NCBI RefSeq assembly: GCF_006345805.1
Contig: NW_021824273.1
Span: 1-20,412, forward strand
Source of the DNA: Octopus sinensis
Taxonomy: Eukaryota
DNA length: 20,412 bases
Reading direction: 5' to 3'
Shown one piece after another: positions 1,021 to 18,369 of this stretch (within the stretch, counting starts at the first letter, position 1; each line of letters begins with the position of its first letter). A model generated the notes under the pieces. The model did not search any database. It was given only the letters and a program-made list of their open reading frames with translations, and had not been told where the DNA came from. A program made the translations under genes and the position numbers.

Positions 1021-1617
1021 TATCATCGTCGTCATCATTCTTTAGCATCTGCTTTCCATTCTGGTATGGGTTGGACGGTTTGACTGAGGACTGGCAAGCC
1101 AGGGGCCTGCACCAAGTTCCAGTCTGATTTGGCATGGTTTCTACAGCTGGATGGATGGAAGCACTCCGTCGGTTACGACGACGAGGGTTCCGGTTGATCC
1201 AATCAACGGAACAGCCTGCTTGTGAAATTAACGTGTAAGTGGCTGAGCACTCCACAGACGCGTGTACCCTTAACGTAATTCTCGGGGGGATATTCAGCGT
1301 GACACAGAGAGTGACAAGGCCGGCCTTTTGAAATACAGGTACAACAGAAACAGGAAGTAAGAGTGAGAGAAAGTTGTGGTGAAAGAGTACAGCAGGGATC
1401 ACTACCATCCCCTGCCGGAGCCTCGTGGAGCTTTTAGGTGTTTTCGCTCAATAAACACTCACAATGCCCGGTCTGGGAATTGAAGCCGCGATCCTATGAC
1501 CGCGAGTCTGCTGCCCTAACCACTGGGCCATTGCGCCTCCACGTCTACAGCTGGATACCCTACCTAATGCCAACCACTCCAAGAGTGTAATAGGTAATGG
1601 TTTACATGCCACTGGGA
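1021..1617 (-). mobile_element. SINE-like family C copy, interrupted by a family B SINE
   Basis: 1021-1152 and 1544-1617 join into the family C sequence (reverse of GGAAGGGCATCCAGCTGTAGAAAC..TGGTGCAG..CCGTCCAACCCAT). A degenerate (ATC)n tail lies at the left end. Confidence 0.8.
1153..1543 (-). mobile_element. tRNA-derived SINE family B, full length, with 13-bp TSD
   Basis: Minus-strand head GGAGGCGCAATGGCCCAGTGGTTAGGGCAGCAGACTCGCGGTCATAGGATCGCGGCTTCAATTCCC has an A box and a B-box-like motif and resembles tRNA-Arg. TCTACAGCTGGAT is repeated at 1140-1152 and 1544-1556. A second copy lies at 3393-3775. Confidence 0.9.
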
Positions 1618-1896: not shown

Positions 1897-2074
1897 ATAC
1901 AATTGCAGCGTGGAAGGTGTTTATAAGCCATTTAAGAAACACACAAAAGCCGTTCGATTCACTCCAACATTTAAGTTTAATTTGTCAAAATATTTTCGTC
2001 GCTAAAATCCGCGACCTGTTCACTGACAAAGTCCGTGCTGCATCTAAGAAAGTAACAGTTAGTTCGTCATATAT

Positions 2075-2890
2075 ATGTACGTATGTATGTGTGTATGTAT
2101 GCATGCATGTGTGTATGTATGTACGTATGCATGTACGCACATACGCCTGCATGTGCATGTATGTATGTATGTATGTATGTATGTATATATGTACGTGTGT
2201 GTATAAGCACGCACATACACTCTATAAAACATAAAGTTATAAACCTGTAGCGATGGATGGATGTAGAGTGACCACTCATCACAACGCTATCAATTTCAAC
2301 TCCCTAACCGAGGCTAGAAAGTGAATTTATGATGCTTGCTCACAAGAACTATACCCTAAAATCTATTATCAGATTTTTATCTCTATATCACAGAACTAAT
2401 GTTTTACTATTGTTCGTATGTATGTATGTTGTATGTATGTATGTATGTGTGTGTGTATGTATGTATGTATGTATGTATGTATGTATGTATGTATGTATGT
2501 GTGTATGTATGCATGCATGTGTGTATGTAATGTACGTATGCATGTACGCACATACGCCTGCATGTGCATGTATGTATGTAGTATGTATGTATGTATATTA
2601 TGTACGTGTGTGTATAAGCACGCACATACACTCTATAAAACATAAAGTTATAAACCTGTAGCGATGGATGGATGTAGAGTGACCACTCATCACAACGCTA
2701 TCAAATTTCAACTCCCTACCACGAGGGCTAGAAAGTGAATTATGATGCTTGCTCACAAGAACTATACCCCCTAAAATCTATTATCTTTTATATCTCTATC
2801 ACAGAACTAATGTTTTACTATTGTTCGTATGTATGTATGTATGTATGTATGTATGTATGTGTGTGTGTATGTTGTATGTATGTATTATGT
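2075..2890. repeat. Direct tandem duplication, period about 411 bp, containing (TATG)n microsatellites
   Basis: TCTATAAAACATAAAGTTATAAACCTGTAGCGATGG starts at 2221 and 2632, and the unique stretch to ..TTGTTCGTATG is repeated. The differences are mostly small indels. Confidence 0.85.
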
Positions 2891-2997
2891 ATGTATGTAT
2901 GTATGCATGTGTGTATGTACATACGTACGCATGTGCGTATGTATGTATACGCGCTCGTATATGTCCATGTATGTGTGTGCGTACATGTACGTGCGTA

Positions 2998-4721: not shown

Positions 4722-4905
4722 GGCAGATACTGGTGTCGCGTAAGAGCACCCATTACACTCTCGGAGTGGTTGGTGTTAGGAAGGGCATCCAGCTGTAGAA
4801 GCCATGCCAAATCAGACTGGAGTCTGGTGCAGCCTTCCTGCTTGTCAGACTTGGTTAAACCATCCAACCCATGCTAGCATGGACAACGGAGGTAAAATCA
4901 TGATG
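4722..4905 (+). mobile_element. SINE-like family C, 5'-truncated
   Basis: GGAGTGGTTGGTGTTAGGAAGGGCATCCAGCTGTAGAA..CCATCCAACCCATGCTAGCATGG followed by a short (ATG)n tail. Confidence 0.8.
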
Positions 4906-4915
4906 ATTATATATA

Positions 4916-4953
<38 letters not shown>

Positions 4954-9532: not shown

Positions 9533-9806
9533 CATATATACGACGGGCTTCTTTTCAGTTTCCGTCTACCAAATCCACTCACAAGGCATTCGTCGGCCCG
9601 AGGCTATAGTAGAAGACACTTGCCCAAGGTGCCACGCAGTGGGACTGAACCCGGAACCATGTGGTTGGTAAGCAAGCTACTTACCACACAGCCACTCCTG
9701 TGCCGATAGTGGAAGATACTTGCCCAAGGTGCTATGTATTGGGACTGAACCTGGAACCATGAGGTTGGGAAAGAAGCGTATTACCACACAACCACACATG
9801 CACCTC
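9403..9806 (-). mobile_element. SINE family A (3'-truncated, 9403-9704) plus a diverged extra head (about 9705-9806)
   Basis: Collinear with the other A copies. The head block GAAGATACTTGCCCAAGGTGC..GAACCTGGAACCAT..TTACCACACAACC is repeated after the first head. Confidence 0.8.
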
Positions 9807-9911: not shown

Positions 9912-10080
9912 AGACTCCAATGAGGGTGCAACCAGAGGGCGCACACTCTCCTAGCTTGATGTAATCTCCAGGGATACAGGCATCCAGCAACAGGACCTCC
10001 GTAATGCTATGATGGACAGTGAAGTCTGGCGTAGCATGGTAAATTCCATCGTCTCAACCACGGTCGAAGAATGATGGTGA

Positions 10081-10131
<51 letters not shown>

Positions 10132-11556
10132 CATACATATCATCTCTTGTGAAAGGTAGAAGAGTCCAGTTTGCTGGACATTGTTGTAGAGCTGAAAAAG
10201 AGGTAATTTCTACTCTTCTCCTCTGGAAGCCATCTACTCGCAATACTAGAGGGTGTACACTCTCCTACCCTGATGTAATCTCCAGGGATACAGGCATCCA
10301 GCAACAGGACCTCCGTAATGCCATGATGGACCGTGAAGTCTGGTGTATCATGGTATATTCCATTGTCTCGACCACAGTCGAACAATGATGGTGATGATAT
10401 ATATATATATATATACATACATACATACATACATACATATCATCTCTTGTGAAAGGTAGAAGAGTCCAGTTTGCTGAACATTGTTGTAGAGCTGAGAACG
10501 AGGTAATTTCTGCTCCTCTCCTCTGGAAGCCATCTACTCGCAATACCAGATGGCACACACTCTCCTACCCTGATGTAATCTCCAGAGATACAGACATCCA
10601 GCAACAGGACCTCCGTAATGCCATGATGGACCGTGAAGTCTGGCGTAGCATGGTATATTCCATTGTCTCGACCACGGTCGAACAATGATGATGATGATGA
10701 TGTATATATACATACATACATACATACATATCATCTCTTGTGAAAGGTAGAAGAGTCCAGTTTGTTGTAGAGCTGAAAACAAGGCAATTTCTACTCTTCT
10801 CCTCTGGAAGTCATCTACTCGCGATACCAGAGGGGCACACTCTCCTACCCTGATGTAATCTCCAGAGATACAGACATCCAGCAACAGGACCTCCGTATGC
10901 CATGATGGACCGTGAAGTCTGGCGTAGCATGGTATTCCATTGTCTCGACCACGGTCGAACAATGATGATGATGATTATATATATACATCATACATACCTA
11001 CATACATATCATCTCTTGTGAAAGGTAGAAGAGTCCAGTTTGTTGTAGAGCTGAAAACAAGGCAATTTCTACTCTTCTCCTCTGGAAGTCATCTACTCGC
11101 GATACCAGAGGGTGCACACTCTCCTACCCTGATGTAATCTCCAGGGATACAGGCATCCAGCAACAGGACCTCCGTAATACCATGATGGACCGTGAAGTCT
11201 GGCGTAGCATGGTATATTCCATTGTCTCGACCACGGTCGAACAATGATGATGATGATGATATATATATACATACATACATACATACATACATATCATCTC
11301 TTGTGAAAGGTAGAAGAGTCCAGTTTGTTGTAGAGCTGAAAACAAGGTAATTTCTACTCTTCTCCTCTGGAAGCCATCTACTTGCGATACCAGAGGGCGC
11401 ACACTCTCCTACCCTGATGTAATCTCCAGGGATACAGGCATCCAGCAACAGGACCTCCGTAATACCATGATGGACCGTGAAGTCTGGCGTAGCATGGTAT
11501 ATTCCATTGTCTCGACCACGGTCGAACAATGATGATGATGATGATATATATATACA

Positions 11557-11587
<31 letters not shown>

Positions 11588-13279
11588 CATCTCTTGTGAA
11601 AGGTAGAAGAGTCCAGTTTGTTGTAGAGCTGAAAACAAGGCAATTTCTACTCTTCTCCTCTGGAAGTCATCTACTCGCAATACCAGAGGGCGCACACTCT
11701 CCTCCCCTGATGTAATCTCCAGGGATACAGGTATCCAGCAACAGGACCTCCGTAATGCTATGATGGACCGTGAAGTCTGGTGTAGCATAGTAAATTCCAT
11801 TGTCTCGACCACGGTCGAACAATGATGATGATGATGATATATATATACATACATACATACATACATACATATCATCTCTTGTGAAAGGTAGAAGAGTCCA
11901 GTTTGTTGTAGAGCTGAAAACAAGGCAATTTCTACTCTTCTCCTCTGGAAGTCATCTACTCGCGATACCAGAGGGTGCACACTCTCCTACCCTGATGTAA
12001 TCTCCAGGGATACAGGTATCCAGCAACAGGACCTCCGTAATGCTATGATGGACCGTGAAGTCTGGTGTAGCATAGTAAATTCCATTGTCTCGACCACAAT
12101 CGAACAATGATGATGATGAGATATATATATATATATATACATACATACATATCATCTCTTGTGAAAGGTAGAAGAGTCCAGTTTGCTGGACATTGTTGTA
12201 GAGCTGAAAAAGAGGTAATTTCTGCTCTTCTCCTCTGGAAGCCATCTACTCGCAATACCAGAGGGCGCACACTCTCCTACCCTGATGTAATCTCCAGGGA
12301 TACAGGTATCCAGCAACCAGGACCTCCGTAATGCTATGATGGACCGTGAAGTCTGGTGTAGCATAGTAAATTCCATTGTCTCGACCACGTTTTGAACAAT
12401 GATGATGATGATGATATATATATACATACATACACTACATACATCCCATATCATCCTTGTGAAAGGTAGAAGAGTCCAGTTTGTGTAGAGCTGGAAAACA
12501 AGGCAATTTCTACTCTTCTTCCTCTGGAAGTCATCTACTCGCGATACCAGAGGGTGCACACTCTCTACCCTGATGTAATCTCCAGGGATACAGGTATCAG
12601 CAACAGGACCTCCGAATGCTATGATGGACCGTGAAGTCTGGTGTAGCATAGTTAATTCATTGTCTCGACCACAATCGAACACTGATGATGAGAATATATA
12701 TATATATATAACATACATACATTTCATCTCTTGTGAAAGGTAGAAAGTCCAGTTGCTGGACATTGTTGTAGAGCTGAAAAAGAGGTAATTCTGCTCTTCT
12801 CCTCTGGAAGCCATCTACTCGCAATACCAGAGGGCGCACACTCTCCTACCCTGATGAATCTCCAGGGATACAGGCTCCAGCAACAGGACCTCCGTTTAAT
12901 GCCATGATGGACCGTGAAGTCTGGCGTAGCATGGTATATTCCATTGTCTCGACCACGGTCGAACAACAATGATGGTGATGATATATCTATATATATACAT
13001 ACATACATATCATCTCTTGTGAAAGGTAGGAGAGTCCAGTTTGCTGGACATTGTTGTAGAGCTGGAAACGAGGCAATTTCTGCTCTTCTCCTCTGGAAGT
13101 CATCTACTCGCGATACCAGAGGGCACACACTCTCCTAACCTGATGTAATCTCCAGGGATACAGGCATCCAGCAACAGGACCTCCGTAATGCTGTGATGGA
13201 CCGTGAAGTCTGGCGTAACATAGTAAATTCCATTGTCTCGACCACGGTCAAACAATGATGATGATGATGAGACTCCAAT
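9912..13279 (+). repeat. Tandem array (1 partial + 11 full units, about 273-300 bp) of RTE/RTE-X LINE 3' ends with (GAT)n tail and TA/TACA spacer, flanked by a 10-bp direct repeat
   Basis: Unit starts (CATCTCTTGTGAAAGG or variant) at 10141, 10441, 10732, 11010, 11295, 11588, 11873, 12153, 12452, 12725 and 13011, with a truncated first unit from 9922. AGACTCCAAT lies at 9912-9921 and 13270-13279. Confidence 0.9.
10141..10388 (+). pseudogene. C-terminal fragment of an RTE/RTE-X-clade non-LTR retrotransposon ORF2 (array unit; also open at 10449-10688)
   Basis: Translation KGRRVQFAGHCCRAEKEVISTLLLWKPSTRNTRGCTLSYPDVISRDTGIQQQDLRNAMMDREVWCIMVYSIVSTTVEQ* shows the RRxxFAGH..W.P..RG...Y.D.I..D.G....L..AM.DR..W pattern typical of post-RT C-termini of RTE-group LINEs. 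The stop runs into a (GAT)n tail. No RT or endonuclease domain is present. Confidence 0.8.
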
Positions 13280-13356
13280 TGTAGTGTGGTTGGTGTAGGT
13301 TGGGTGGGAGCGGAACATCTAATCCATGCTTGCATGGAAGGTGGATGTATAATAAT

Positions 13357-13668
13357 GACATGCACGTTCACACCGACATGGACGCTGCCTGACTGGCGTC
13401 CGTGTCGGTGACACGTAAAAGCACCAACCGATCGTGACCCTTTGCCAGCCTGCCCTGGCCCCTGTGCCAGTGGCACGTAAAAAACACCCACTACCCTCAC
13501 GAGTGGTTGGTGTTAGGAAGGGCATCCAGCTGTAGAAACACTGCCACATCAGACTAGAGCCTGGTGCAGCCTCCTTGGCTTACCAGACCCCGGTCGAACC
13601 GTCCAACCCGTGCTAGCATGGAAAAACGGACATTAAATGACGATGATGATGATGATGATGATGATGAT
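13357..13668 (+). mobile_element. SINE-like family C, longest copy in the window, with (GAT)n tail
   Basis: Two GG(T/C)(G/A)CACGTAAAA(A)(G)CACC-type blocks, GGAAGGGCATCCAGCTGTAGAAAC, and a 3' end CCGTCCAACCCGTGCTAGCATGGAAAAACGGACATTAAATGA(CGA)(TGA)n. Confidence 0.85.
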
Positions 13669-13691
13669 ATATATATATATATATACAAAAT

Positions 13692-13811
13692 TTAAAGGAC
13701 TGACCACACTTGCTGAGTTTTTTCTTGAGAACACATTCTCCGTGGAAAATAGCGATTTTGACGTCTATATCTAGCATACATGCTGTCCACTTTTAGTGGT
13801 CAGTCCTTTAA
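13692..13811. mobile_element. 112-bp MITE with TTAA flanks (Kolobok-like termini)
   Basis: TTAA (13692-13695) + AGGACTGACCAC ... GTGGTCAGTCCT + TTAA (13808-13811). The inverted match extends to 19 bp (13689-13707 vs 13796-13814). Purine-purine termini with a TTAA target fit Kolobok rather than piggyBac (CCC termini). Confidence 0.55.
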
Positions 13812-13920
13812 ATTGTGTGTAAAAATATTTTAATCTTCGGATTTTTTTAATATGCTAGGCCACTGGTTTTAATTGATTAATATCAATTTCTACCCTTATT
13901 CAATTTTATATATATATATT

Positions 13921-14183
13921 GGCCCGCTGGCCCCCATACCGGTGGCACGTAAAAAGCACCATCCAATCGTGGCCGTTTGCCAGCCTCGTCTGCCACGTAA
14001 AAAGCACCCACTACACTCACAGAGTGGCTGGCGTTAGGAAGGGCATCCAGCCGTAGAAACATTGCCAGATCAGACTGGGCCTGGTGCAGCCTTCTGGCTT
14101 CCCAGACCCCAGTTGAACCGTCCAACCCATGCTAGCATGGAAAACAGACGTTAAATGATGATGATGATGATGATGATGATGAT
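13921..14183 (+). mobile_element. SINE-like family C copy with (GAT)n tail
   Basis: Collinear with 13357-13668. Confidence 0.85.
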
Positions 14184-16209: not shown

Positions 16210-16628
16210 GATAAAATATACATTTGTGTATTTGGGTGTATATATGTGTATAGATATATATATGTAGATGTATATGTATATATACATGGAGAAAAGAACA
16301 CTCAATATGAAATGTAGTTACTCGTACACATACAGACATACAGACATAGACATCAGTATGTGTTTATACACAACTCTATATTTTATATTGAGTACTCCTT
16401 TCACCTTGTTTACACATCTTTTTTTTTTCTGTCAAAAAATATACATTTGTGTGTGTGTGTGTATGTGTATCAAGCCAATAAGCCATTTCGAAAATTATAC
16501 AAGTTGTTTCCCTTAGACTAATAAACCCTTTTTATCCTTTCAACTCCTTTTTTTCCAATTAATTCATTCCATTATTGTTACTACTATTACTACTACTACC
16601 ACCACCACCACCACTATTATTATTATTG

Positions 16629-17230
16629 CCTATTTCTTTACTACCCATAAGGGGCTAAACATAGAGCGGACAAACAAGGACAGACAAACGGATTAAGTCG
16701 ATTACATCGACCCCAGTGCGTAACTGGTACTTAATTTATCGACCCTGAAAGGATGAAAGGCAAAGTCGACCTCGGCGGAATTTGAACTCAGAACGTAAAG
16801 ACAGACGATATACCTATTTCTTTACTTCCCACAAGGGGCTAAACATAGAGGGGACAAACAAGGACAGACAAACGGATTAAGTCGATTACATCGACCCCAG
16901 TGCGTAACTGGTACTTAATTTATCGACCCCGAAAGGATGAAAGGCAAAGTCGACCTCGGCGGAATTTGAACTCAGAACGTAAAGACAGACGATATACCTA
17001 TTTCTTTACTACCCACAAGAGGCTAAACATAGAGGGGACAAACAAGGACAGACAGAGGTATTAAGGTGATTACATTGACCCCAGTGCGTCACTGGTACTT
17101 AATTCATTGACATTGAAAGGATGAAAGGCAAAGTCGACCTCAGCGGAATTTGAACTCAGAACATAATGGCAGACGAAATACCACCAGGCATTTCGCCCGG
17201 CGTGCTAACGTTTCTGCCAGCTCGCCGCCT
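16629..17230 (-). mobile_element. tRNA-headed SINE family E with a 184-bp B-box-to-tail segment in three tandem copies
   Basis: CCTATTTCTTTACT starts at 16629, 16813 and 16997 (period 184). There is one head only (minus strand AGGCGGCGAGCTGGCAGAAACGTTAGCACGCCGGGCGAAATG). Each unit has B-box-like GAGTTCAAATTCC. Confidence 0.85.
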
Positions 17231-17249
17231 TATTACCATCATCATCATT

Positions 17250-17537
17250 GCCTTTGCGCAGCTTCTAATGCTGGAGATGTACTACGGTGTCAGCTGTTCA
17301 CTACCAGTGAACTAAGGTAACACCTCTTATTTTTCGAGCACCTACAGGGTGTTTTCTGCAAGTGCACCCACCCTTATTGCAGCCCCTATTTGTTCCATGT
17401 ATTTCTTGAGATTTTTATTCACGGTTTCCAGTGCTCCGACAATTATTGGTACTACTGCTTCCTTTTTCATCAACCACAACTACTTAACTTCCCAAGCTAA
17501 CCTGTCATATCTCTCGACTTTTCTTTCTGCCTTATCT
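17250..17537 (-). pseudogene. Degenerate 3' end of an R4/Dong-like (restriction-like endonuclease) non-LTR retrotransposon, family 1
   Basis: Manual translation DKAERKVERYDRLAWEVK*LWLMKKEAVVPIIVGALETVNKNLKKYMEQIGAAIRV, then shifted-frame HLQKT..VLEK*. This fits the K..KY.DL..E...LW.....VP.V.GALG..K.L..........LQKT.LLGTA.ILR.VL C-terminal motif. A short 3' UTR contains hairpin GTTCACT-ACC-AGTGAAC (17296-17312). Confidence 0.75.
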
Positions 17538-17560: not shown

Positions 17561-17746
17561 TGAGAGAAAAGGGCATGCCATCAAAGTGACACTGGGGTAC
17601 AAATATACGAAGCCCATGTTTCCAAAGGTGAATTATCCAAACCTCTAAGAATTCCTTTCAACACATGGCTATGATGCTCCCCCACTACTTCTGCTCATGA
17701 TCAGAGATGCACATATCATCAGCCACTAAGGGACATGCTCAAATGG
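17561..17746 (-). mobile_element. Internally deleted copy of a TAA-embedded non-autonomous element
   Basis: Same ends as 17869-18264, lacking 210 bp between two CCCA motifs. The strand is inferred only from the orientation of the (TAA)n tract. Confidence 0.75.
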
Positions 17747-17766
17747 ATTATTATTATTATTATTGC

Positions 17767-17811
<45 letters not shown>

Positions 17812-17866
17812 CATTATTATTATTATTATCATTATCATTATTATTATCATCATCATTATTATTATT
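17747..17866. repeat. (TTA)n/(TCA)n microsatellite; further tracts at 18265-18444 and 18827-19008
   Basis: Trinucleotide runs that give the poly-I/L/Y/N pseudo-ORFs. Confidence 0.95.
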
Positions 17867-17868
17867 AA

Positions 17869-18264
17869 GTGAGAGAGCAGTTCATGCCATCAAAGTGACA
17901 CTGGGGTAAAATATACGAAGCCCAATATACCCATCATGACTACCCGTCTGATAAAGGTACACCAGGCACATGCATCACAACCATATGTGCGCGACATGGT
18001 GATCTCATATCAAGATAAACAGCACATGACCTTGCAGGTGGGGCCCAGTTAGAATTTTCTTCTGGTTGAGTAACCCATCCCACTAAAAAGGTCCCTGAAT
18101 AAGGGTTGTTTAAGGATGTTGAACGAACTACCCATGTTTCCAAAGGTGAATTATCCAAACCTCCAAGAATTCCTTTCAACACACGGTTATGATGTTCCCC
18201 CACTACTTCTGCTCATGATCAGAGATGCACATATCGTCAGCCACTAAGGGACATGCTCAAACGG
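17869..18264 (-). mobile_element. About 396-bp TAA-embedded non-autonomous element (SINE-like, no recognisable tRNA head)
   Basis: Flanked on both sides by (TTA)n, with a second, deleted copy at 17561-17746. No convincing coding signal. Confidence 0.7.
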
Positions 18265-18289
18265 ATTATTATTATTATTATTGCTATTA

Positions 18290-18335
<46 letters not shown>

Positions 18336-18369
18336 GCTATTATCATTATTATTATCATTATCATTATTA

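What the first reader, a model, noticed from the sequence alone, without database searches (positions are those of the whole stretch)
9912..13279. TSD-flanked concatemer of RTE-LINE 3' ends: a possible retro-mobilised satellite
Seen: 11 full units plus one 5'-truncated unit, each an RTE/RTE-X ORF2 C-terminus + stop + (GAT)n tail + TA/TACA spacer. AGACTCCAAT flanks the entire array (9912-9921, 13270-13279). The array begins mid-unit, and the last unit ends on the bare (GAT)n tail with no spacer. At the 5' junction a 9-nt piece GAGGGTGCA (9922-9930) precedes a restart at ACCAGAGGGCGCA. Established: target-primed reverse transcription starts at the LINE 3' tail, truncates at the 5' end, makes TSDs and can leave 5' junction duplications. 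Inference: the internal units contain sequence upstream of the 5' truncation point, so they cannot come from duplicating one truncated monomer. The inserted template must already have been multimeric, for example a tandem-array transcript or a circular RNA copied in rolling fashion, as proposed for retrozymes. This would be a non-autonomous, LINE-tail-derived mobile satellite.
Basis: partly seen in the sequence, partly recalled or inferred. Interest (0 to 1): 0.85.

Follow-up and report, generated by a model that had tools for sequence, protein, structure and literature searches.

The report
Retro-copied tandem array of RTE tails
Twelve head-to-tail copies of the last ~250 bases of an octopus RTE jumping gene sit between a perfect 10-base target-site duplication, so the block (or a short precursor of it) was most likely pasted in from a multi-copy RNA. 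This is an uncommon but not unprecedented way for a tandem repeat to reach a new site.

Summary
Window 9922-13269 holds one 5'-truncated unit and 11 full units. Each unit is the last 83 codons of an RTE-type endonuclease/reverse-transcriptase ORF. Its stop codon is the first TGA of a (TGA)n tail, followed by a non-RTE (TA)n(TACA)n spacer. The last unit ends on the bare tail, and AGACTCCAAT flanks the block and occurs nowhere else in the window.

The best reading is a single target-primed reverse transcription event on an RNA holding more than one unit. The source was most simply a pre-existing genomic array, or an RTE with a tandemised 3' end. Local unequal exchange then followed, because the two terminal units are the most diverged. 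How many units were inserted, anywhere from about 1.6 to 11.6, cannot be told.

The retrozyme/circular-RNA idea fails its defining test: no ribozyme was found. The claim of a mobile satellite family is untested. Only one other copy of the family could be reached, a normal monomer in Octopus vulgaris.

Precedents exist: Bov-A2, TSD-flanked SINE multimers in a bivalve, and tandem insertions made by R2 template jumping. Interest is moderate.

The parts
9912..9921 (+). 5' copy of the target-site duplication AGACTCCAAT
   Evidence: Read directly. This is one of only two exact occurrences in the window.
9922..9930 (+). 9-nt 5'-junction piece GAGGGTGCA. It repeats unit positions ~112-120 just before the unit restarts at ACCAGAGGG.
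   Evidence: The T/C difference from u0 lies at a CpG, so it does not show which unit the piece came from.
9931..10138 (+). u0: 5'-truncated unit (141 bp of RTE sequence from unit position ~107), a degenerate tail TGATGGTGA, and a (TA)n(TACA)3 spacer
   Evidence: 95% identity to unit positions 107-256. It has 6 private substitutions.
10139..10438 (+). u1: full unit, long (in-frame) form
10439..10729 (+). u2: full unit, long form
10730..11007 (+). u3: full unit, short form (10-bp deletion), with four 1-bp deletions
11008..11292 (+). u4: full unit, short form
11293..11585 (+). u5: full unit, short form
11586..11870 (+). u6: full unit, short form, 3'-half variant b
11871..12150 (+). u7: full unit, short form, variant b; 0.4% from u9
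12151..12449 (+). u8: full unit with a long-form 5' half and a variant-b 3' half (recombinant pattern); 3' hairpin disrupted
12450..12722 (+). u9: full unit, short form, with many 1-bp deletions
12723..13008 (+). u10: full unit, long form; its tail variant TGATGGTGATGAT is shared with u1, and the TGATGGTGA core with u0
13009..13269 (+). u11: last full unit, long form. It ends on the bare (TGA)4TG tail with no spacer and has 6 private substitutions.
13270..13279 (+). 3' copy of the target-site duplication AGACTCCAAT

Best explanation
The block is a 5'-truncated retrocopy made in one target-primed reverse transcription (TPRT) event by an octopus RTE-type LINE. The template RNA carried tandem copies of a unit made of three parts: the last 246 nt of the RTE ORF, a (UGA)n tail, and a (UA)n(UACA)n spacer.

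**Inferred origin of the unit.** A 5'-truncated RTE copy sat in a (TA)n-type microsatellite. Unequal exchange between the flanking microsatellite repeats duplicated copy plus spacer into an array. This happened either as a free-standing array or at the 3' end of a full-length RTE.

**Inferred insertion.** A read-through transcript of that array was bound by the RTE protein at a unit's 3' hairpin and tail. Reverse transcription started inside a (UGA)n run on DNA nicked at T|AGACTCCAAT. It ran back through at least one spacer and stopped inside a unit, with a small back-jump that left GAGGGTGCA. Second-strand repair then made the 10-bp duplication.

**Inferred later history, from the divergence pattern.** Unequal exchange at this locus duplicated and homogenised inner units. 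The present 11.6 units are therefore an upper bound on what was inserted, and about 1.6 units is the lower bound.

**Shown:** the anatomy, the RTE origin of the unit, the foreign nature of the spacer, the TSD, and the flush tail.
**Inferred:** the RNA route, the source array, and the order of events.
For: 1. **RTE origin of the unit.** The peptide aligns end to end with the last 83 residues of ~1,020-1,060-aa proteins carrying Exo_endo_phos and RVT_1. These lie on 3.2-4.0-kb contigs. The best matches are P0049 at 81% and P0125 at 77%. DNA identity to L006 is 84% over the whole unit.
2. **Family tail.** All five distant relatives, plus the Octopus vulgaris copy L007 and the metagenome contig L008 (cephalopod origin inferred), end ..GGTCGA(A)C(AA)(TGA)n, and the stop codon opens the tail. 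The array's last 17 bases are therefore the family's true 3' end.
3. **Foreign spacer.** In L006 and L008 the coding sequence continues upstream of the unit's first bases (..CCACCTGT(C/T)TCATC..), where the array has (TACA)nTA.
4. **What an ordinary insertion looks like.** The copy in O. vulgaris (L007, 94.8% to the unit) has its (TGA)3 tail directly against a 7-8-bp TSD, (A)AAAACCA, with no (TA)n. The array's outer ends look the same.
5. **Significance of the TSD.** The 10-mer is unique to the two boundaries. A matched simulation gives about 1e-4.
6. **The array did not arise here.** The junctions hold (TA)n(TACA)n, not AGACTCCAAT. A double insertion or TSD-mediated duplication at this site is therefore not what built the units (see the prediction in PMC5932611).
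7. **Retained 3' recognition region.** The last 36 nt are 92-94% conserved in L003-L006, against 66-82% for the rest. A hairpin, CAUUGU.UCGAC(N4)GUCGAACAAUG, abuts the tail in 5 of 6 sequences folded.
8. **A (TA)n target for the progenitor is plausible.** Three of four (GAT)n-tailed SINE copies in the window have (TA)n right after the tail, and one has it on both sides.
9. **Later local turnover.** Terminal units have about 6 private substitutions each, against 0-3 in inner units. u7 and u9 differ by 0.4%.
Against: - No second multimeric locus, source array, or empty site could be examined, so the RNA route rests on one TSD.
- The terminal-unit divergence shows much of the array is younger than the insertion. 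This weakens any claim that a long array was copied.
- The last unit's hairpin has a C-A mismatch (GGTCAAAC), although this may be a later mutation.
- Hairpin z-scores are weak, and no compensatory changes were seen.
- Copy number and the many 1-bp deletions in u3, u9 and u10 may reflect assembly error.
- An exhaustive protein search found no other multi-unit antisense ORF of this family. That library holds only annotated or called genes, so the absence is weak evidence.
Confidence: 0.5

Rival explanations
1. One TPRT event on monomer RNAs, with no pre-existing array. The reverse transcriptase copied a transcript of a single truncated RTE copy flanked on both sides by (TA)n. It then switched template and copied part of a second unit. 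The switch was either an end-to-end jump or re-annealing of the nascent (TA)n cDNA to the (UA)n downstream of the tail, on the same or another RNA. This gave a multimer of about 1.6 units or more, which unequal exchange later expanded.
For: - R2 proteins make longer products by jumping from finished cDNA to further template molecules in vitro. 'Tandem insertion' 5' junctions are seen in cells (PMC11371274).
- (TA)n follows the tail in 3 of 4 SINE copies here, so a monomer with (TA)n on both sides is realistic.
- (TA)n length differs widely between units, about 3 to 23 repeats, as out-of-register annealing would give.
- The small back-jump at the 5' junction shows this event did involve a template switch.
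- Terminal-unit divergence fits a short initial insert.
Against: - All full units would then descend from one unit. Up to 8.8% divergence and the linked long/short and a/b variants would all have to arise at this locus. That is possible but needs more steps.
- It requires the switch to fall precisely in the microsatellite.
- No monomer with this 5' end and spacer has been seen.
Confidence: 0.2
2. DNA-level origin at this locus, by one of three routes. (a) Two independent RTE insertions at one site followed by unequal exchange. (b) One truncated monomer insertion later lengthened by ectopic gene conversion or out-of-register repair from an array elsewhere. (c) Integration of an extrachromosomal circle of satellite DNA.
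For: - Double insertion followed by expansion is a documented source of TE-derived arrays. It gives dimers with different 5' truncations (PMC5932611).
- TSD-flanked and TSD-separated SINE multimers occur in a bivalve (PMC11481361).
- Four (GAT)n-tailed retroposons lie in the same orientation within 4.3 kb here.
- The edge-unit divergence shows that unequal exchange acts here.
Against: - Double insertion predicts the locus's own TSD in the junctions. The junctions instead hold (TA)n(TACA)n, which is absent from both flanks.
- A circle integration would not end exactly on the LINE tail, and is not expected to leave a 10-bp duplication.
- The conversion route still needs a pre-existing array elsewhere, and it is a rare event.
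Confidence: 0.12
3. Rolling reverse transcription of a circular monomer RNA, as proposed for retrozymes.
For: The unit size (273-300 bp) and the tandem arrangement with a TSD resemble metazoan non-LTR retrozymes (PMC7761336).
Against: - No self-cleaving ribozyme of any Rfam family is found on either strand. This holds at E <= 1 for the whole window and E <= 10 for four units.
- A circle gives identical units, but the units carry structured variants.
- A circle has no free 3' tail, yet the array ends exactly on the tail.
Confidence: 0.03
4. Assembly artefact or a chance flanking repeat: either the array or its copy number is mis-assembled, or the 10-bp repeat is coincidental.
For: - u3, u9 and u10 carry 4, 12 and 6 private indel columns, nearly all 1-bp deletions. 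This is typical of unpolished long-read sequence.
- The window is extremely repeat-rich. Loose criteria find some 10-bp repeat at 0.5-3% of random boundary pairs.
Against: - Units differ by structured, shared variants rather than noise.
- Both flanks are unique.
- The 10-mer is unique to the two boundaries, and the matched simulation gives about 1e-4.
Confidence: 0.05

Closest known systems
Bov-A2 retroposon of ruminants (Onami et al. 2007, as described in PMC4324840)
   Same: It is a non-autonomous element built of tandem monomers homologous to an RTE-clade LINE (BovB). The monomers are joined by a linker. It ends in a trinucleotide repeat tail, has no pol III promoter, and is inserted as a multimer.
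   Different: - Bov-A2 is a fixed dimer with one terminal tail and a 27-bp unique linker, and it is present in very many dispersed copies.
- Here there are up to 11.6 units, each with its own tail and a microsatellite spacer.
- Only one locus is known here, so family-level mobility is not shown.
TSD1-(SINE-TSD1)n and TSD1-(SINE)n-TSD1 multimers in the bivalve Scapharca broughtonii (PMC11481361)
   Same: These are mollusc retroposon multimers of 4-15 units with target-site duplications. The authors discuss unequal recombination between TSDs as the route to their formation and expansion.
   Different: - The present array fits neither type. Its spacer is not this locus's TSD, and its first unit is the most truncated one rather than the most complete.
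- It reads as a (unit-TSD2)n array copied to a new site and framed by a new TSD1.
- The 184-bp x3 SINE trimer at 16629-17182 in this window does fit their second type.
Metazoan non-LTR retrozymes (PMC7761336)
   Same: Tandem repeats of roughly 150-300 bp with TSDs, no coding capacity, thought to spread through RNA using LINE enzymes.
   Different: Retrozymes are defined by a hammerhead ribozyme in each unit and by circular RNA. No ribozyme is found here. The unit here is a LINE 3' end that carries its own recognition signal and tail.
TE-derived satellites formed by double insertion and unequal exchange (McGurk and Barbash 2018, PMC5932611); SINE-derived satellites of squamates (PMC10702118)
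   Same: Tandem arrays of TE fragments, tail-to-internal junctions, and expansion and homogenisation by unequal exchange.
   Different: Those arrays arise and stay where the insertions happened, and their junctions carry the local TSD. This array carries a foreign junction and is itself framed by a TSD and a flush tail. It therefore appears to have been moved.
Tandem insertions made by R2 reverse-transcriptase template jumping (PMC11371274)
   Same: Head-to-tail copies are made in one TPRT event. The 3' unit is complete, and the 5'-most unit may be truncated.
   Different: That case is an engineered R2 system with excess template RNA. Its junctions are template 5' end to template 3' end, with no microsatellite spacer.

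Membership tests
RTE-clade LINE (origin of the unit) | Homology to the C-terminus of a single ~1,000-aa ORF with an AP-type endonuclease and a reverse transcriptase | tested here: met
   The unit peptide aligns with the last 83 aa of 1,017-1,061-aa proteins carrying PF03372/PF14529 and PF00078.
RTE-clade LINE (origin of the unit) | Compact element (~3.2-3.6 kb) with almost no 3' UTR, ending in short tandem repeats rather than poly(A) | tested here: met
   Relatives sit on 3.2-4.0-kb contigs. The stop codon is the first repeat of a (TGA)n tail in L001 and L003-L008. The canonical RTE-BovB length of 3.2 kb and its expansion in cephalopods are reported in PMC10294476.
RTE-clade LINE (origin of the unit) | Placement inside the RTE clade (and BovB versus RTE-X type) in a reverse-transcriptase phylogeny with reference elements | not tested
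   No reference LINE set was available. Pfam cannot separate LINE clades.
Single target-primed (TPRT) retro-insertion | Target-site duplication framing the whole insert | tested here: met
   A 10/10 match, AGACTCCAAT, found only at the two boundaries.
Single target-primed (TPRT) retro-insertion | 3' end flush on the element's own tail, with the 5' end truncated | tested here: met
   The last unit ends (TGA)4TG directly against the TSD. The first unit starts at position ~107. An ordinary family copy in L007 has the same form.
Single target-primed (TPRT) retro-insertion | An empty site with one copy of the TSD in an allele, orthologue or paralogue | not testable with these tools
   The flanks are unique in the window. 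The right flank only holds an old SINE 3' remnant. The octopus genomes could not be searched at the DNA level.
Retrozyme (ribozyme-bearing circular-RNA retroelement) | A self-cleaving ribozyme (hammerhead type I in animals) in each unit | tested here: not met
   Rfam 15 on both strands finds only microsatellite-driven miRNA false positives in the array. This holds at E <= 1 for the whole window (top 150 of 183 hits listed) and at E <= 10 for units u1-u4.
Retrozyme (ribozyme-bearing circular-RNA retroelement) | Monomer-length circular RNA | not testable with these tools
   This needs RNA data.
Bov-A2-like LINE-derived multimeric retroposon / 'mobile satellite' family | Many dispersed multimeric copies, each with its own TSD, a flush tail and a variable 5' end | not testable with these tools
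   There is no other copy in the window. Collection scans found nothing. Protein routes reached only monomeric copies, L007 and L008.
Bov-A2-like LINE-derived multimeric retroposon / 'mobile satellite' family | Units derived from the partner LINE and retaining its 3' recognition region and tail | tested here: met
   The hairpin plus tail is intact in u1-u6 and u10, and altered in u0, u7, u8, u9 and u11.
In-situ TE-derived satellite by double insertion (McGurk-Barbash) | The tandem junction contains the local target-site duplication | tested here: not met
   The junctions are tail-(TA)n(TACA)nT-unit. AGACTCCAAT is absent from all 11 junctions.
In-situ TE-derived satellite by double insertion (McGurk-Barbash) | Expansion and homogenisation by unequal exchange (inner units more alike than edge units) | tested here: met
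   Private substitutions: u0 about 6 in 141 bp, u11 6 in 244 bp, inner units 0-3. u7/u9 differ by 0.4% and u3/u4 by 1.3%.

The most novel reading that the evidence does not exclude
Octopus genomes may hold a family of 'retro-mobile satellites'. These would be arrays of RTE 3' ends in which every unit keeps the LINE's hairpin-plus-(UGA)n recognition signal. The RTE enzyme could then start on any unit of an array transcript and paste multi-unit, variably truncated copies at new sites. Each copy would be a ready-made seed for a new satellite locus. This would be a ribozyme-free, LINE-tail-based route for spreading tandem repeats.
Probability: 0.25. Interest if true: 0.65.

Novelty: new variant of a known kind. 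Interest (0 to 1): 0.45.

Why it matters
How satellite repeats reach new chromosomal sites is a long-standing question. The proposed routes are extrachromosomal circles, carriage by transposons, and retrozymes, and few loci show the act itself. This locus carries a clean molecular signature (TSD, flush LINE tail, 5' truncation inside a unit) that a tandem repeat was moved by a LINE enzyme. If other loci repeat the pattern, octopus RTE arrays would offer a simple, testable model of satellite seeding by retrotransposition. They would also extend the Bov-A2 principle from dimers to open-ended arrays. For genome annotation, it warns that such blocks are neither plain satellites nor plain LINE fragments.

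Tried and rejected
**Searches that led nowhere**
- Pfam on the 83-aa peptide found nothing.
- Exact-pattern scans used two conserved unit motifs. The first motif was scanned against metagenome, bacterial/archaeal genome and viral contigs; the second against metagenome and viral contigs only. No real hit came back. The one match, L002, is a chance 21-mer inside a bacterial gene with no extended homology.
- An exact look-up of ten window ORFs in the protein collection found none, so the window's own genome record could not be reached.
- The contig look-up for the Nucella protein P0138 was not on record.
- Search for a paralogous empty site: the joined flanks match nothing else around the insertion point. 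The right flank only contains a 45-nt remnant of an older (GAT)n-tailed SINE.
- Pfam on four other window ORFs gave only low-complexity hits.

**Ideas considered and dropped**
- Independent nested insertions into each other's tails. Rejected because all 11 full units share the same 5' end and spacer.
- The (TA)n(TACA)n spacer as part of the RTE tail. Rejected because it is absent after the tail in L001 and L003-L008, and absent at the array's own 3' end.
- Using the T/C difference of the 9-nt junction piece as proof of a second template unit. Dropped because it is a CpG transition site.

**Statistics**
- A naive random-boundary simulation overstated chance because of microsatellites. It was replaced by a matched criterion.

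**Literature**
- Searches found no description of RTE-derived arrays in octopus.
Full report
**1. What is there**

Window 9922-13269 is a head-to-tail array. Tandem Repeats Finder reports 10105-13270, period 285, 11.0 copies, 90% matches. Anchoring on the conserved unit start gives one 5'-truncated unit, u0, at 9922-10138. Eleven full units start at 10139, 10439, 10730, 11008, 11293, 11586, 11871, 12151, 12450, 12723 and 13009. They are 261-300 bp long. A consensus unit hits these twelve places at 90-96% identity and nowhere else in the 20.4-kb window.

Each unit has three parts:
- 234-247 bp that translate as ..SSLVKGRRVQFAGHCCRAE..LLLWKPSTRNTRGRTLSYPDVISRDTGIQQQDLRNAMMDREVWRSMV.SIVSTTVEQ.
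- A (TGA)n run whose first TGA is the stop codon.
- A (TA)3-23(TACA)3-8T spacer.

Units u1, u2, u8, u10 and u11 have the in-frame 'long' form. Units u3-u7 and u9 share a 10-bp deletion that breaks the frame.

The last unit ends ..CAATGATGATGATGATG and abuts AGACTCCAAT (13270-13279). The same 10-mer lies at 9912-9921, followed by GAGGGTGCA and then the unit from ACCAGAGGGCGCA onward.

The 10-mer occurs exactly twice in the window. A simulation matched to the observation asked for a 10-mer present only twice, flush with one boundary, and recurring within 12 nt of the other. It gives about 1e-4. Looser criteria give 0.5-3%, only because the window is packed with microsatellites.

**2. What the unit is**

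The peptide has no Pfam match. It does hit short ORFs in metagenome assemblies. One of these, in L003, lies just downstream of an 818-aa ORF with Exo_endo_phos_2 and RVT_1.

Searching with that ORF found more than 100 proteins of about 1,020-1,060 aa on 3.2-4.0-kb contigs, most of them carrying endonuclease as well as reverse-transcriptase domains. The unit peptide aligns end to end with their last 83 residues. P0049 matches at 81% (residues 624-705 of 705), P0125 at 77%, and P0011 at 71% (941-1021 of 1021).

This architecture is that of the RTE clade: one ORF, about 3.3 kb, no 3' UTR, and a short-repeat tail. PMC10294476 gives 3.2 kb as the canonical RTE-BovB length. It also reports RTE-BovB as expanded, and RTE-X as nearly absent, in cephalopods. 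I did not run a phylogeny, so 'RTE' rests on architecture, and the BovB-versus-RTE-X question is open.

At the DNA level the whole unit is 84% identical to the 3' end of L006. In L006 and L008 the coding sequence continues upstream of the unit's first bases, where the array has (TACA)n. The unit is therefore a 5'-truncated RTE 3' end, and the spacer is foreign to the RTE.

Every relative ends ..TCGACCnnGGTCGA(A)C(AA)(TGA)n. The last 36 nt are 92-94% conserved in four of five distant relatives, against 66-82% for the rest. They fold into a hairpin that abuts the tail in 5 of 6 sequences, with weak z-scores and no covariation. This fits the stem-loop-plus-tail recognition known for 'stringent' LINEs such as eel UnaL2 (my recollection of Kajikawa and Okada 2002; not checked here).

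**3. Whose genome**

An antisense ORF of the array matched a 'hypothetical predicted protein' of Octopus vulgaris at 93% (P0130). Its locus is L007 (GCA_951406725.2, OX597819.1:90,383,548-90,403,901). It holds one dispersed copy that is 94.8% identical to the long-form consensus.

In that copy the RTE homology runs further 5' (..VEPILLYGSETWTL..). The (TGA)3 tail abuts a 7-8-bp duplication, (A)AAAACCA, and no (TA)n follows.

The parent RTE family therefore lives in Octopus. That the window itself comes from an octopus is an inference from this match and from its SINE content. An ordinary insertion of the family looks just like the outer ends of the array.

**4. How the array got here**

The inner units contain 106 bp of RTE sequence and a spacer that u0 lacks. 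The array therefore cannot have grown from one truncated monomer.

The junctions hold (TA)n(TACA)n and never AGACTCCAAT. This argues against the array being built at this site by double insertion or TSD-mediated duplication, both of which put the local TSD into the junction (PMC5932611; PMC11481361).

The simplest reading is that a (unit-spacer)n structure formed elsewhere and was copied here by TPRT. The copying began in a (UGA)n run and stopped inside a unit.

A plausible origin for that structure is a truncated RTE copy lying in a (TA)n microsatellite, duplicated by exchange between the flanking repeats. In this window 3 of 4 (GAT)n-tailed SINE copies have (TA)n right after the tail, and one has it on both sides. 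The source could be a free-standing array or a full-length RTE with a tandemised 3' end. The latter would satisfy cis-preference.

**5. What tempers this**

- **Edge divergence.** The two edge units are the most diverged: about 6 private substitutions in 141 bp for u0 and 6 in 244 bp for u11, against 0-3 in inner units. Some inner units are near-identical, with u7/u9 at 0.4% and u3/u4 at 1.3%. This is the usual mark of unequal exchange inside an array. Many units are therefore probably younger than the insertion, and about 1.6 units at insertion would be enough.
- **Template switching.** A multi-unit cDNA can also arise by template switching on monomer RNAs. R2 proteins do this in vitro and give 'tandem insertion' junctions in cells (PMC11371274). 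A monomer flanked by (UA)n on both sides would allow repeat-guided switching.
- **Retrozyme idea.** It fails its defining test. Rfam finds no ribozyme on either strand, at E <= 1 for the window and at E <= 10 for four units.
- **Comparison.** No second multimeric locus, source array or empty site could be examined.
- **Assembly quality.** u3, u9 and u10 carry many 1-bp deletions that may be assembly errors.

**6. Comparison with what is known**

- The nearest precedent for a LINE-tail multimer that moves is Bov-A2. It has two BovB-derived monomers, a 27-bp linker, an (AGC)n tail and no pol III promoter (PMC4324840, citing Onami 2007).
- TSD-framed SINE multimers are described in a bivalve (PMC11481361). 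The present array fits neither of their two types. It reads as their first type copied to a new site.
- SINE- and LINE-derived satellites are common (PMC10702118, PMC5932611), but their means of reaching new sites is seldom visible.
- The array is not a retrozyme.

**7. Verdict**

The structure is real and clean. A TPRT insertion of a template with more than one unit is the best explanation: confidence 0.5 for an array transcript, plus 0.2 for the template-switching variant. The 'mobile satellite family' claim is open, at about 0.25. I classify it as a new variant of a known kind. Interest is moderate and would rise if a genome search finds further TSD-framed multimers.

Noticed in passing
window 16570-17250 (minus strand): A tRNA-derived SINE whose 184-bp body is triplicated in tandem (16629-17182, 93% matches). 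It has one head, then two head-truncated bodies, and one microsatellite-like flank on each side. This matches the TSD1-(SINE)n-TSD1 type described in a bivalve (PMC11481361). Monomer copies of the same SINE are in L007 at 17625-17865 and 18133-18365.
   Followed up: partly
window 13393-13668, 13927-14183, 4733-4935 (+), 1022-1153 (-): A SINE-like family ending ..CCCATGCTAGCATGGAAAACGGACGTTAAA(TGA)n, which is the same trinucleotide tail as the RTE. In 3 of 4 copies (TA)n follows the tail directly. In the copies at 13927 and 4733 the (TA)n is followed by the head of the tRNA-like SINE, which may indicate a composite element or a preferred (TA)n target.
   Followed up: partly
window 13312-13358: An old, diverged remnant of the 3' end of that (GAT)n-tailed family lies about 33 bp downstream of the array's 3' TSD (alignment score 39-46; shuffles reach at most 31). 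Four (GAT)n-tailed retroposons therefore lie in the same orientation within 9922-14183.
   Followed up: partly
window 10730-11007, 12450-13008: Units u3, u9 and u10 carry 4, 12 and 6 private indel columns, nearly all single-base deletions. The other units have almost none. This could be unpolished long-read error inside the repeat, or real decay.
   Followed up: no
It weakly resembles the antisense translation of an RTE tail (..VPDFTVKQ.. versus ..TPDFTVHH..; E = 1.4e-5, 27% identity). It may be an RTE-tail array in a gastropod.
   Followed up: partly
window 2070-2919: A 411-bp unit repeated 2.1 times (95% matches), made largely of (TATG)n/(GTAT)n microsatellite blocks.
   Followed up: no
window 9606-9795: A 100-bp segment of the tRNA-like SINE repeated 1.9 times in tandem (84% matches), just upstream of the array's left flank.
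   Followed up: no
L007 10310-10395 (minus strand): The O. vulgaris RTE copy has an internal deletion relative to full-length relatives. The sequence ..YTRLLM joins directly to KGRRIQFAGH, so about 30 codons (RVKNLSWK..PxVSSLV) are missing.
   Followed up: no
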